Below the pieces are notes generated by a model that worked only from the letters and a program-made list of their open reading frames with translations, searched no databases and was not told where the DNA came from. From assembly GCF_001194135.2 (NCBI RefSeq), contig NC_068987.1, forward strand, positions 103,711,547-103,751,065: a stretch of 39,519 bases of DNA, in the 5' to 3' direction. Source of the DNA: Octopus bimaculoides. Taxonomy: Eukaryota. The first letter of the stretch is position 1. Each line of letters opens with the position of its first letter. Position numbers and translations under genes: made by a program. Shown here one piece after another: positions 33,186 through 33,886 of the stretch.

Positions 33186-33886
33186 AAGCTCTACAGGCAC
33201 GTATGTGCTATCGGGTGGGCTTGTCCGAGGGGCGCTCAGAGTGGCGAAACCGTTCTGCACGCCCTCGTTCAGTGTTCGGGCATTGCTGACTTGTGGGGTT
33301 ATGTTGAACAGCTGCTGTCATGTGTGCAACGGATCCGTCTGCCGGCCGAGTCTGTAGTGACGATTGCAACGCCGCCCTCCTTCAATCGGGCAGGCAAGGC
33401 AGTTTTCCTTTGCCTGGTGGTTGTGGTGAAAGAGGTTGTTCGGTGGACAAGTCTGAAAGGCATGAGGACAGATAGATTCCTCTTTGAAAAGGAAATTGAG
33501 AGTGGAGAAGGAAGTGCTGTCTTCGAGTGAGTTTATTGAGAGGAGGATGAAAGTTGCGAAAATGGCAAGAGTGGTTGGTACCTCTTTAAGTGTAGACCTG
33601 TGAGTCGGAGAGAAGGAATTGGAGAGGACAATTGCTCATAGGGTTTCAGGGAAATCTCGGACAGCGGGGTTCCTAGAGGCGTTCCTGTATCAGGAGAGCC
33701 ACATCTCTATCATCCTCCCCACATTTTTACCTTTGTATGCTATATATATGTCTTCTTTTCCAGTGTATACTGTGTATACTATCATTTTATTATTATATGT
33801 AAACCCCCCACACTTTATGTTTGTCCCTGTATTGTCCCCCTCATCCTTTGCCCTTGTGGCAAATAAATGAAATCATTATTATTATT
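33186..33886 (+). mobile_element. 5'-truncated L1-superfamily (Tx1-like) LINE: ORF2 C-terminus plus 3' UTR
   Basis: KLYRH...ACPRGAQSGETVLHALVQCSGIADLWGYVEQLL is a C-terminal zinc knuckle (CxxC..ET..H...C...W pattern, with the second Cys changed). The 3' UTR has AATAAA at ~33862 and an (ATT)n tail. Confidence 0.8.

What the first reader, a model, noticed from the sequence alone, without database searches (positions are those of the whole stretch)
33816..33886. SINE-A 3' tails match the 3' end of the Tx1-like LINE in the same window
Seen: the LINE ends TATGTTTGTCCCTGTATTGTCCCCCTCATCCTTTGCCCTTGTGGCAAATAAATGAAATC(ATT)n. One SINE-A tail type (37937-37994, also 18218-18275) reads TTTGTCTGTCCTTGTTTGTCCTCTTTATGTTTGGCCCCCTTGTGGGCAATAAAGAAAT and aligns along ~55-60 nt. 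A second tail type shares an exact 12-mer, CCTTGTGGCAAA (33852-33863 versus the reverse complement of 27815-27826), followed by TGAAA; the copy at 28479 ends GTGGCAAAATTTGAAATCATCATTAT. Established: SINEs that share a 3' end with a LINE are usually mobilised by it, and Tx1-clade elements are often sequence-specific, whereas mammalian L1 needs only poly(A). Inference: the dominant SINE family of this genome is mobilised by a Tx1-type LINE through stringent 3'-end recognition, with subfamilies carrying different versions of the tail.
Basis: partly seen in the sequence, partly recalled or inferred. Interest (0 to 1): 0.72.

Follow-up and report, generated by a model that had tools for sequence, protein, structure and literature searches.

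The report
Octopus SINE tail copied from LINE
The last ~55 bases of a broken L1-type jumping gene in this octopus-like sequence are also carried by one subfamily of the local short repeats (SINEs). This is the textbook sign that the short repeat borrows the long one's copying enzyme, and it is a real example but not a new kind of thing.

Summary
Bases 33818-33886 are the 3' end of a 5'-truncated LINE remnant at 33189-33886. That end aligns with the "T3" tails of two SINE-A copies at 44/58 identical positions, and no dinucleotide shuffle reached that score.

The segment belongs to the LINE and is not an inserted SINE piece. Seven other LINE copies end in the same hairpin and A-rich block, six of them also in GAAAT and five in (ATT)n or (ATC)n. 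They come from Octopus sinensis, Argonauta hians and unnamed contigs, with ORF2 41-100% identical to the reference copy. This block is the best conserved part of the 3'UTR. Argonauta SINEs carry it as their terminal tail.

The LINE belongs to the L1 superfamily. It has an APE endonuclease, a reverse transcriptase and a zf-RVT zinc knuckle, and its best solved relative is human L1 ORF2p. Tx1-clade membership is likely but was not tested by phylogeny.

- Both T3 tails in the window are internal, each fused to a second SINE unit.
- The T2 tail resembles the LINE end only weakly (z about 3-4), though it keeps the hairpin through compensatory changes.
- The T1 tail shares only the general layout.
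- Stringent recognition and sequence-specific targeting are inferred, not shown.

This is a new member of a known kind, of moderate interest.

The parts
33189..33603 (+). Remnant of the C-terminal part of LINE ORF2, with a degenerate zinc-knuckle region (C..CPRG......H....C). It is frameshifted near 33480-33530 and its stop codon is at 33601-33603. The copy is 5'-truncated at 33189.
   Evidence: tblastn of P0091 gives residues 425-524 at 33186-33485 (69% identity) and residues 535-574 at 33481-33600. Intact relatives P0002 and P0008 carry Pfam zf-RVT PF13966 over the homologous stretch. Homology to L001 begins at 33189. The window fragment itself has no Pfam hit.
33604..33817 (+). Variable part of the LINE 3'UTR.
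   Evidence: It aligns with the 3'UTRs of L004, L005, L006, L007 and L008 at only 29-40% mean pairwise identity.
33818..33874 (+). Conserved 3'-terminal module of the LINE. This is the block shared with the SINE T3 tails and it ends in GAAATC.
   Evidence: 44/58 identical to both T3 tails, z = 8-9. Among 6 LINE copies the last 30 alignment columns are 73% identical and the last 60 are 64% identical, against 29-40% for the rest of the UTR.
33847..33863 (+). Predicted hairpin: TTTGCC - CTTGT loop - GGCAAA. A possible outer helix pairs 33841-33844 with 33867-33870.
   Evidence: This is the minimum-free-energy fold, although the energy alone is not distinctive (z = -1.2). Across 27 LINE and SINE tails the inner 4-bp stem is paired in 88.9% of cells against 72.9% in shuffles (0/500). 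There are 12 double-change cells against 2.8 expected, and slid controls reach at most 53%.
33875..33886 (+). Terminal (ATT)4 microsatellite of the LINE.
   Evidence: Read directly. Other copies end in (ATT)n: more than 25 units in L004, 4 and 18 units in L006. L008 and L009 end in (ATC)n.
33178..33188 (+). Putative upstream target-site duplication, ATTTTTTTAAG.
   Evidence: Read directly. It matches ATTTTTATTAAG at 33884-33895 apart from one extra base. This is inference; no empty site was available.
33884..33895 (+). Putative downstream target-site duplication, ATTTTTATTAAG.
   Evidence: Read directly.
18218..18275 (+). T3 tail of a SINE-A copy whose head and body run from about 18046 to 18217. 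It is LINE-derived. It is followed at 18276 by a second SINE unit that starts at consensus position ~19.
37937..37994 (+). T3 tail of a SINE-A copy that begins at about 37764. It has the same junction to a second, position-19 SINE unit. The upstream flank is unrelated to that of the 18046 copy.
27807..27826 (-). T2 tail core (CCTTGTGGCAAAATTTGAAA) of the SINE-A copy at 27821-28012. It holds the exact 12-mer shared with the LINE.
28481..28500 (-). T2 tail core of the SINE-A copy at 28518-28694. It ends in GAAATC(ATY)n like the LINE, and its stem is TGCC/GGCA.
   Evidence: (z = 6.0).
38353..38372 (+). T2 tail core of the SINE-A copy at 38163-38327, with stem TGGC/GCCA. Further T2 cores lie at 18636-18655, 18861-18880, 21520-21539 and 16138-16157 (-).
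8656..8675 (-). T1 tail core (CCTTGTACCTAGAGTAGAAA). Further T1 cores lie at 18455-18474, 19473-19492, 27451-27470, 37728-37747 and 28030-28049 (-). T1 shares only the CTTGT-N10-GAAA layout with the LINE end.

Best explanation
Bases 33818-33886 are the conserved 3'-terminal cis-module of an octopod LINE family of the L1 superfamily, most likely the Tx1 clade. The module has four parts in order: a pyrimidine-rich stretch, a short hairpin with a (C)UUGU loop, an AAUAAA-like A-rich run ending in GAAAUC, and an (AUU)n repeat.

The T3 tail of SINE-A is a copy of this module. The proposed mechanism has three steps.
1. A Pol III transcript of such a SINE presents the same 3' end as the LINE RNA.
2. 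The LINE's ORF2 protein (endonuclease plus reverse transcriptase) takes it as a template.
3. The protein copies it into a nicked AT-rich target by target-primed reverse transcription.

The direction of transfer is LINE to SINE, because the module is shared by LINE lineages that have diverged to 41% amino-acid identity. T2, and perhaps T1, are probably diverged versions of the same module taken from sister LINE lineages that were not sampled here.

Shown: the sequence sharing, its membership in the LINE, its conservation across lineages and genera, its terminal position on Argonauta SINEs, and some compensatory changes in the stem.

Inferred: binding of the module by ORF2p, mobilisation in trans, and the origin of T1 and T2.
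For: - T3 against five close LINE tails gives z = 7-11.5, with 0 of 500 shuffles reaching the score. Against the window LINE, 44/58 positions are identical.
- Independent LINE copies end the same way. Each line below shows the end of that copy's own 3'UTR.
  - L004 (intact ORF2 C-terminus)...GGGCCCTTGTGGCCAATAAAAGAAATC(ATT)n.
  - L005 (Octopus sinensis)...GGGCCCTTGTGGCTAATAAAGAAAT.
  - L006 (Argonauta hians, near full-length element)...TGCCCTTGTGGCTAATAAAAGAAATA(ATT)4. A second copy in L006 ends ...GGACCCTTGTGGTCAATAAAAGAA(TTA)n.
  - L008 and L009 (41% and 50% amino-acid identity to the reference copy P0091)...GGGCCTTTGTAGCCAATAAAAGAAATC(ATC)n and ...GGGGCCCTTGTGACTAATAAAAGGAATC....
- The last 30 columns of the 3'UTR alignment are 73% identical, against 29-40% upstream.
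- About fifteen elements in Argonauta L006 end in this module; several were checked and are SINEs (short tRNA-like units and CORE-like bodies related to SINE-A), in the form ...TTCGGCCCTTGTGGCTAATAGAGAAATC.
- The hairpin stem shows G-C to A-U, G.U to U-A and C-G to G-C changes that keep pairing. Paired cells are 88.9% against 72.9% in shuffles, and there are 12 double-change cells against 2.8 expected (0/500).
- The layout CTTGT-N10/11-GAAA occurs 9 times in the window against 0.76 expected. All 9 are the LINE end or SINE tails of types T1, T2 and T3.
- LINE class: Exo_endo_phos, RVT_1 and zf-RVT domains. ORF2 is collinear with human L1 ORF2p, E = 8e-13 for the N-terminal half and 5e-22 for the RT half, against 1e-13 for R2 on the RT half.
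Against: - In this window both T3 tails are internal, not terminal. Here they cannot be shown to have served as the priming end.
- T3 is the rarest tail in the window: 2 copies, against 7 with T2 and 7 with T1.
- T2 similarity is marginal (z = 3.2-3.8). T1 against the window LINE is at chance (z = 0.8).
- The 5' halves of T1 and T2 match nothing in the LINE 3'UTRs.
- The folding energy of the tail is not better than that of shuffles.
- Covariation rests on about 4-5 independent events among related sequences.
- The A-rich run contains AATAAA, which could be conserved in LINEs as a polyadenylation signal rather than as a protein-binding site.
- The only LINE with published evidence of recent activity in octopus is an RTE element (PMC9115989).
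Confidence: 0.68

Rival explanations
1. T3 is a historical relic. An old T3-tailed SINE, still the common form in Argonauta, was captured as the first unit of a two-unit SINE. The abundant T1 and T2 subfamilies of Octopus would then be mobilised today by a different LINE clade such as RTE, CR1 or Dong-R4. On this reading the LINE-SINE match in the window says little about what drives the dominant SINE family.
For: - Both T3 copies are internal and share the same junction.
- T1 does not match the window LINE (z = 0.8), and T2 matches only marginally.
- No LINE with a T1 or T2 end was found.
- RTE is the LINE with evidence of recent activity in octopus (PMC9115989).
- RTE, CR1 and Dong-R4 all have recently active families in O. 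vulgaris (PMC13282606).
Against: - T2 ends in the same GAAATC(ATY)n as the LINE.
- T2 keeps the hairpin at the same distance from the end, with compensatory stem changes.
- T1, T2 and T3 all share the CTTGT-N10-GAAA plan.
- L1-Tx1 also has 13 recently active families in O. vulgaris (PMC13282606).
Confidence: 0.3
2. Recognition is relaxed rather than stringent. Only the terminal (AUU)n repeat would matter for priming. The conserved block upstream would be kept in LINEs for another reason, such as the AAUAAA polyadenylation signal or transcript stability, and would ride along in SINEs.
For: - The block contains AATAAA.
- Fold energies are unremarkable.
- Long (ATT)n and (ATTAT)n arrays abut SINE 5' ends, which suggests repeat-guided integration.
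Against: - Pol III-transcribed SINEs have no use for a poly(A) signal, yet they keep the whole block.
- In Argonauta SINEs the signal is changed to AATAGA while the hairpin is kept.
- Stem changes are compensatory.
Confidence: 0.15
3. The transfer ran the other way. The LINE picked up its end from a SINE, or 33816-33886 is a SINE fragment that landed at the end of this LINE copy.
For: None beyond the similarity itself.
Against: - The block follows the LINE's own 3'UTR in seven other copies from at least two genera. Their ORF2 is 41-100% identical to the reference copy, and no SINE body lies upstream of the block.
- It is carried by unrelated SINE bodies: the CORE-like SINE-A and a short tRNA-like Argonauta SINE.
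Confidence: 0.04
4. The similarity is a chance match between pyrimidine-rich, AT-rich sequences.
For: The composition is simple, and some single T2 copies score at chance.
Against: 0 of 1000 and 0 of 500 shuffles reach the T3 scores. The 12-mer has an expectation of 0.00. The layout occurs 9 times against 0.76 expected.
Confidence: 0.01

Closest known systems
SINE/LINE pairs with a common 3' tail, 'stringent' type (Ohshima et al. 1996; eel UnaSINE1/UnaL2, Kajikawa & Okada 2002; reviewed in PMC3747384)
   Same: A tRNA-promoter-type SINE carries the last ~55 nt of a LINE from the same genome. The module has a short stem-loop followed by a short terminal repeat. It is the most conserved part of the LINE 3'UTR.
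   Different: The partner here is an L1-superfamily LINE, whereas most known pairs involve CR1/L2 or RTE. Nothing was tested experimentally. In this window the tail is internal in both copies.
L1-clade stringent pairs: maize ZmSINE2/3 with a monocot L1 lineage, and Chlamydomonas SINEX-3_CR with L1-1_CR (PMC3747384, PMC3472496)
   Same: An L1-clade LINE with a conserved 3' stem-loop that is shared with SINEs. The stem shows compensatory changes while the loop and 3' flank are conserved.
   Different: Those pairs are from plants and algae and end in poly(A). This one is from an animal, ends in (ATT)n or (ATC)n, and is probably Tx1 rather than L1 proper. [quoted passage not shown]
SINEU mobilised by Tx1-Mar in crocodilians (PMC4494074)
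   Same: A SINE family linked to a Tx1-clade LINE.
   Different: There the link rests mainly on a shared target preference (the Mariner-N4_AMi transposon) and shared 5' snRNA heads. Here it rests on a shared 3' tail, and no specific target was found for the LINE.
CORE-SINEs, including octopus OR1/OR2 (Ohshima & Okada 1994; PMC4824008, PMC4758252) and MIR/L2
   Same: SINE-A has box A- and box B-like motifs and then a body. From memory that body resembles the CORE domain. Octopus SINEs are annotated as tRNA-Core (PMC8967140). CORE-SINEs are known to swap LINE-derived tails.
   Different: Identity of SINE-A with OR1/OR2 was not tested, because no reference sequence was available. The known CORE-SINE partners listed in PMC3747384 are L2, L3 and RTE, not L1/Tx1.
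Microsatellite-targeting Tx1 lineages: Kibi (TC)n, Koshi (TTC)n, crocodilian Tx1 (TTCC)n (PMC4494074)
   Same: Several SINE-A copies have long (ATT)n or (ATTAT)n arrays directly at their 5' ends in tail orientation. The elements form head-to-tail arrays.
   Different: The LINE copy in the window lies between an ordinary AT-rich duplication and not inside a microsatellite. Target specificity of the LINE itself is not shown.

Membership tests
SINE/LINE pair with a shared 3' tail | Significant sequence similarity between the 3' end of the SINE and the 3' end of a LINE of the same genome | tested here: met
   T3 against the window LINE: 44/58 identical, z = 8-9, 0/1000 shuffles. T3 against four other close LINE tails: z = 7-11.5. 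T2 is inconclusive (z = 3.2-3.8). T1 is not met (z = 0.8 against the window LINE).
SINE/LINE pair with a shared 3' tail | The shared block is a constant part of the LINE, not an insertion into one copy | tested here: met
   It is present after the LINE's own 3'UTR in L004, L005, L006 (two copies), L007 (degenerate), L008 and L009.
SINE/LINE pair with a shared 3' tail | The shared block lies at the extreme 3' end of the SINE, with the same terminal repeat | tested here: inconclusive
   In the window both T3 blocks are followed by a second SINE unit. In Argonauta L006 the block is terminal on many SINEs and ends in GAAATCTATT. T2 ends in GAAATC(ATY)n like the LINE.
Stringent-type 3' recognition | A conserved stem-loop in the tail, supported by compensatory changes | tested here: met
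   A 4-bp stem closes the (C)TTGT loop. It is 88.9% paired against 72.9% in shuffles (0/500), with 12 double-change cells against 2.8 and slid controls at 53% or less. Without the T2 tails it is 88.0% against 81.8%, with 4 double-change cells. The support is modest: the stem is short and the independent events are few.
Stringent-type 3' recognition | The 3'UTR tail is required for retrotransposition, and the SINE is mobilised in trans by the LINE protein | not testable with these tools
   This needs a retrotransposition assay.
L1 superfamily of LINEs | ORF2 with an N-terminal APE endonuclease, a reverse transcriptase and a C-terminal CCHC motif, collinear with L1 ORF2p | tested here: met
   In the near full-length relative in L006: PF03372, PF00078 and PF13966. 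Human L1 ORF2p is the best solved relative for both halves. The window copy keeps only the C-terminal ~140 residues.
Tx1 clade | Placement within Tx1 in a reverse-transcriptase phylogeny with reference elements | not tested
The support is indirect. Mollusc L1-superfamily LINEs are classed as Tx1 or L1-Tx1 (PMC11203168, PMC13282606, PMC8967140).
Tx1 clade | ORF1 of the RRM/CCHC-knuckle kind rather than the mammalian Transposase_22 type | tested here: inconclusive
   The L006 ORF1 (639 aa) contains CHRCGLPGHIRSGC. It has no Pfam hit and no PDB hit, including none to L1 ORF1p. This is consistent with Tx1 as described in PMC5203782, but no RRM was detected.
Tx1 clade | Sequence-specific target choice. 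This is common in the clade but not universal. | tested here: not met
   The window LINE is flanked by ATTTTTTTAAG and ATTTTTATTAAG. The 3' flanks of other copies differ from one another. SINE copies do show an association with (ATT)n arrays, which may reflect repeat-guided priming.
CORE-SINE / tRNA-derived SINE | A tRNA-related head and a CORE central domain | tested here: inconclusive
   ARAGORN and Rfam find no tRNA in the SINE heads. Box B-like GAGTTCAAATTCC and a weaker box A-like motif are visible by eye. The CORE resemblance is from memory and from the literature labels (PMC8967140, PMC4824008) and was not computed.

The most novel reading that the evidence does not exclude
The whole octopod SINE expansion would have been driven by one diversified group of L1/Tx1-type LINEs that use stringent recognition of a 3' hairpin. 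T1, T2 and T3 would be co-evolving tail variants, each matched to a sister LINE lineage. Integration would be guided into (ATT)n-type microsatellites and existing element tails by the terminal (AUU)n repeat. That would make octopods the first animals in which an L1-superfamily LINE with stringent recognition built a SINE load of about 10% of the genome.
Probability: 0.3. Interest if true: 0.6.

Novelty: new member of a known kind. Interest (0 to 1): 0.4.

Why it matters
SINEs make up about 11.6% of the Octopus vulgaris genome (PMC13282606) and about 40% of the octopus transposable-element content (PMC8967140). Their expansion is specific to octopuses. No paper found in the searchable library names the LINE that moves them, and the attention has gone to an RTE element expressed in the brain (PMC9115989).

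A shared 3' module points to an L1/Tx1-type family as one partner. That gives a concrete candidate for assays and for dating SINE bursts against LINE activity.

It would also add an animal example to the very short list of L1-clade LINEs that recognise a specific 3' end rather than a plain repeat. That list bears on whether stringent recognition is the ancestral state of the L1 group (PMC3747384).

The principle itself has been textbook since 1996, and curated repeat libraries that I could not consult may already record this pair.

Tried and rejected
- A protein-word search with the ORF spanning the LINE 3'UTR (33619-33867), meant to pull in more LINE ends, found no candidates.
- L001, the first homologue found, breaks off before the tail. 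The L072 contig ends inside a 17-nt tandem repeat of the 3'UTR, before the tail.
- A metagenome scan with the ORF2 alignment gave 107 pattern matches, none confirmed.
- A metagenome scan with TATGTTN{4,9}CTTGTNNNNAATAN{2,3}GAAAT gave 61 loci. All were chance matches in AT-rich microbial contigs and none was a cephalopod tail.
- Looking up the window ORF 33162-33527 to identify the source assembly failed; it is not on record. P0092 is also not on record.
- Rfam at gathering thresholds and at E <= 1, and ARAGORN, gave no tRNA or other RNA family in the window or in the SINE array.
- Pfam on the window's own ORF2 fragment and on seven other window ORFs gave nothing.
- Searching the octopus transcriptome supplement of PMC9115989 for tail 13-mers gave no occurrences. 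The supplements of PMC4494074 and PMC13282606 hold no sequences.
- I tested whether the 5' halves of T1 and T2 derive from an internal part of the LINE 3'UTR. There is no similarity.
- I searched for LINE-like sequence upstream of T1 or T2 cores. All 14 cores found sit on SINE bodies (13 in the window, 1 in L005).
- Dong/R4, suggested by the (TAA)n-type repeat, is rejected because the element has an APE endonuclease and is collinear with L1 ORF2p.
- Segmental duplication as the cause of the two T3 loci is rejected because their upstream flanks are unrelated.
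Full report
**What the window is**

The 39.5-kb window is draft eukaryotic sequence with 11 runs of N and many microsatellites. It contains about 17 copies or fragments of one SINE, called SINE-A here.

The SINE, the LINE relatives and the literature all point to an octopod genome. The LINE's relatives come from Octopus sinensis, Argonauta hians and unnamed contigs (Logan sequencing-run assemblies, JGI and ENA metagenome contigs). 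The exact species could not be identified.

**Checking the observation**

- The LINE end runs from 33818 to GAAATC at 33874 and is followed by (ATT)4 to 33886.
- The T3 tails at 18218-18275 and 37937-37994 align with it over 58 columns with 44 identities.
- The scores lie 8-9 standard deviations above dinucleotide shuffles, and 0 of 1000 shuffles reach them.
- The 12-mer CCTTGTGGCAAA occurs exactly twice, at the two places named, against an expectation of 0.00.

**Anatomy of the LINE copy in the window**

It is a remnant. Homology to relatives starts abruptly at 33189. The remnant has three parts:
- The last ~140 codons of ORF2, with one frameshift and a stop at 33601-33603.
- A 3'UTR of ~270 nt.
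- The (ATT)4 repeat.

It appears to be flanked by an 11-12-bp duplication, ATTTTTTTAAG at 33178-33188 and ATTTTTATTAAG at 33884-33895. I read this, and it is an inference. That is the usual signature of a 5'-truncated target-primed insertion into AT-rich DNA.

**What kind of LINE**

The window fragment alone has no Pfam hit. An exhaustive HMMER search found 89 relatives. The more intact ones carry zf-RVT, and the longer ones also carry RVT_1.

A near full-length element lies in Argonauta hians locus L006:
- ORF1 (639 aa) with a CCHC knuckle.
- ORF2 with an APE endonuclease (PF03372), a reverse transcriptase (PF00078) and zf-RVT (PF13966).
- Both halves of ORF2 find human L1 ORF2p as their best solved relative and are collinear with it. 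The E-values are 8e-13 and 5e-22, against 1e-13 for R2 on the RT half.
- ORF1 matches neither L1 ORF1p nor any Pfam family.

This settles L1-superfamily membership and excludes Dong/R4, RTE and CR1/L2.

Tx1 against L1 proper could not be tested by phylogeny, because no Tx1 reference sequence was obtainable. Three indirect arguments favour Tx1:
- In gastropods the L1 superfamily is represented by Tx1 only (PMC11203168).
- Octopus repeat annotations list L1-Tx1 and no separate L1 class (PMC13282606, PMC8967140).
- CCHC-type ORF1 variants in non-mammalian animals go with Tx1 (PMC5203782).

I put Tx1 at about 0.7.

**Is the tail part of the LINE?**

Yes.

| Copy | Source | End of the 3'UTR |
|---|---|---|
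| L004 | metagenome-derived contig, intact ORF2 C-terminus | ...GGGCCCTTGTGGCCAATAAAAGAAATC, then more than 25 ATT units |
| L005 | O. sinensis | ...GGGCCCTTGTGGCTAATAAAGAAAT |
| L006, two copies | Argonauta hians | ...TGCCCTTGTGGCTAATAAAAGAAATA(ATT)4 and ...GGACCCTTGTGGTCAATAAAAGAA(TTA)n |
| L008 and L009 | ORF2 only 41% and 50% identical to P0091 | ...GGGCCTTTGTAGCCAATAAAAGAAATC(ATC)n and ...GGGGCCCTTGTGACTAATAAAAGGAATC... |

In an alignment of six 3'UTRs the last 30 columns are 73% identical on average and the last 60 are 64% identical. The rest of the UTR is 29-40% identical.

So the block is the conserved terminus of the LINE group. It is older than the splits among these LINE lineages, and the transfer ran from LINE to SINE.

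**The SINE side**

SINE-A copies fall into three subfamilies that differ in body and tail.

| Tail | Copies in the window | Sequence | Match to LINE ends |
|---|---|---|---|
| T3 | 2 | LINE module | z = 7-11.5 against five close LINE tails, 0/500 |
| T2 | 7 | ...CCCCCTCCCCCGAAATTGCTGGCCTTGTGCCAAAATTTGAAATC | Consensus z = 3.8 against the window LINE, 3.2 against L004, 3.3 against L008 |
| T1 | 7 | ...CCTCCCCCAAAATTTCGGGCCTTGTACCTAGAGTAGAAAAGAA | z = 0.8 against the window LINE, at most 3.8 against any LINE tail |

Further points on T1 and T2:
- The 5' halves of T1 and T2 match nothing in the LINE UTRs.
- Every T1 or T2 core in the sequences at hand sits on a SINE body.
- All three tails and the LINE ends share one plan: a stem, a CTTGT loop, a 4-nt return arm, 6-7 A-rich bases, then GAAA. 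The pattern CTTGTN{10,11}GAAA occurs 9 times in the window against 0.76 expected. All 9 are the LINE end or SINE tails.
- T2 also shares the terminal GAAATC followed by ATY repeats.

In Argonauta L006 about fifteen elements end in this module. The copies examined include a short tRNA-like SINE and CORE-like bodies related to SINE-A. All carry it as a true terminal tail...TTCGGCCCTTGTGGCTAATAGAGAAATCTATT. The partnership is therefore shared by two octopod genera and by unrelated SINE bodies.

**The hairpin**

RNA folding puts a small hairpin on the CUUGU loop in most tails. The energies are no better than those of shuffles.

Pair counts are more informative.
- On 23 LINE, T3 and Argonauta tails, the 4-bp inner stem is paired in 88.0% of cells against 81.8% in shuffles (0/500), with 4 double-change cells.
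- With five T2 tails added, it is 88.9% against 72.9% (0/500). There are 12 double-change cells against 2.8 expected, and the covariation score is 0.471 against 0.157. All slid controls are at or below 53% paired.

The changes are G-C to A-U (L006 second copy), G.U to U-A (window LINE and T2), G-C to C-G (T3) and C-G to G-C (T2). Within T2 both TGGC/GCCA and TGCC/GGCA occur.

These are perhaps four or five independent events among related sequences. The support is real but modest.

In the window both T3 tails are internal. After GAAATA comes AGAAACGTTAGC..., which is a second SINE unit starting at consensus position ~19. The junction is identical in the two loci, while the upstream flanks are unrelated.

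Two explanations remain open. This may be a dimeric SINE subfamily. Alternatively it may be a recurrent template jump or nested insertion guided by AGAA microhomology. The copy at 18476 joins a T1 tail to a position-20 unit in the same way.

Either way T3 is the rarest tail here and cannot be shown to have primed these insertions. The statement about 'the dominant SINE family' therefore rests on the weaker T2 evidence and on the shared layout of T1. Partners from other LINE clades (RTE, CR1, Dong-R4, all active in octopus according to PMC13282606 and PMC9115989) could not be tested for lack of a repeat library.

**Targeting**

The LINE copy in the window is not in a microsatellite.

Several SINE copies have long arrays directly at their 5' ends in tail orientation, with no element upstream. 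These are (ATT)38 at 28695-28809, (ATT)18 at 21328-21382 and (ATTAT)43 at 13439-13653. Neighbouring SINEs always share orientation.

This fits priming guided by pairing of the (AUU)n end with AT-rich repeats, or a microsatellite preference of the kind known for some Tx1 lineages (PMC4494074). It was not pursued further.

**Comparison with what is known**

SINEs that share a 3' tail with a LINE have been the standard model since 1996. Octopus SINEs have been known since 1994 and are annotated as tRNA-Core (PMC8967140, PMC4824008).

Two things are less common here:
- The partner class is unusual. A 2012 survey found only 3 SINEs with L1-clade tails among 58 pairs, all in plants or algae (PMC3747384). 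The Tx1-SINEU link in crocodilians rests on target preference (PMC4494074).
- No paper in the searchable library names a LINE partner for octopus SINEs.

I could not consult Repbase or Dfam, which may already record the pair.

**Verdict**

- The finding is a new member of a known kind, with interest about 0.4.
- Probabilities: about 0.85 that T3-tailed SINEs were mobilised by this LINE family, and about 0.5 that T2 and T1 are variants served by sister lineages. Both are my own estimates, not computed values.

Noticed in passing
window 18044-18885 (+), 27800-28233 (-), 37690-38375 (+): SINE-A copies form head-to-tail arrays of 2-4 units, always in the same orientation. Every adjacent pair in the window shares its strand.
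   Followed up: partly
window 18276, 18476, 37996: Three SINE units lack the first ~18-19 bases and are fused directly to the tail of the preceding SINE at a GAA/AGAA microhomology. The junctions read GAAATA|AGAAACGTTAGC (twice) and GTAGAAAGG|AATCGTTA. This may be a dimer family or a repeated template jump. It is unresolved.
   Followed up: partly
window 28695-28809, 21328-21382, 13439-13653: Long (ATT)38, (ATT)18 and (ATTAT)43 arrays abut the 5' ends of SINE copies in the orientation of the element tail, with no element upstream of the array. This suggests insertion into or next to ATT-type microsatellites.
   Followed up: partly
window 8844-8899 (-): A 22-bp unit covering the first bases of the SINE (GGCGGCGAGTTGGCAGAAACGT) is tandemly repeated 2.5 times at the 5' end of the copy at 8694-8864.
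   Followed up: no
window 31234-31487: A 62-bp tandem repeat of about 4 copies at 85% identity, spanning a 10-N gap. It has no similarity to the SINE or the LINE.
   Followed up: no
window 1455-1796 (+): A 113-aa ORF (...HKLNARWVPRELTEAYKHNNVEICQLLFDCYNDE...) reads to me like a mariner-type transposase fragment, but Pfam finds nothing. The resemblance is from memory only.
   Followed up: partly
window N runs, e.g. 3599-3995, 11448-12058, 21768-22080, 29905-30456: The four N runs whose flanks I saw are bordered by TA/CA-type microsatellites, so these gaps look like short-read assembly breaks at simple repeats. The other seven gaps were not checked.
   Followed up: no
L006 (Argonauta hians) 4760-5360: One LINE 3' end with (ATT)18 is followed directly by three tandem copies of a ~145-157-bp short tRNA-like SINE. 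Each copy ends in the LINE-type tail. The 5'UTR of the next, near full-length LINE follows immediately.
   Followed up: partly
L072 1330-1462: The 3'UTR of a related LINE copy contains at least 6 tandem units of about 17 nt (ATATTGTCCCTTGTTTT). This is an expansion of the pyrimidine-rich part of the tail. The contig ends inside the repeat.
   Followed up: no
P0092: A protein 69% identical to the cephalopod LINE ORF2 fragment P0002 is deposited at NCBI as 'MAG: zinc-binding domain-containing protein [Herbaspirillum sp.]'. It is probably animal DNA binned into a bacterial genome. Three JGI metagenome contigs (L002-L004) carry the same LINE family.
   Followed up: no
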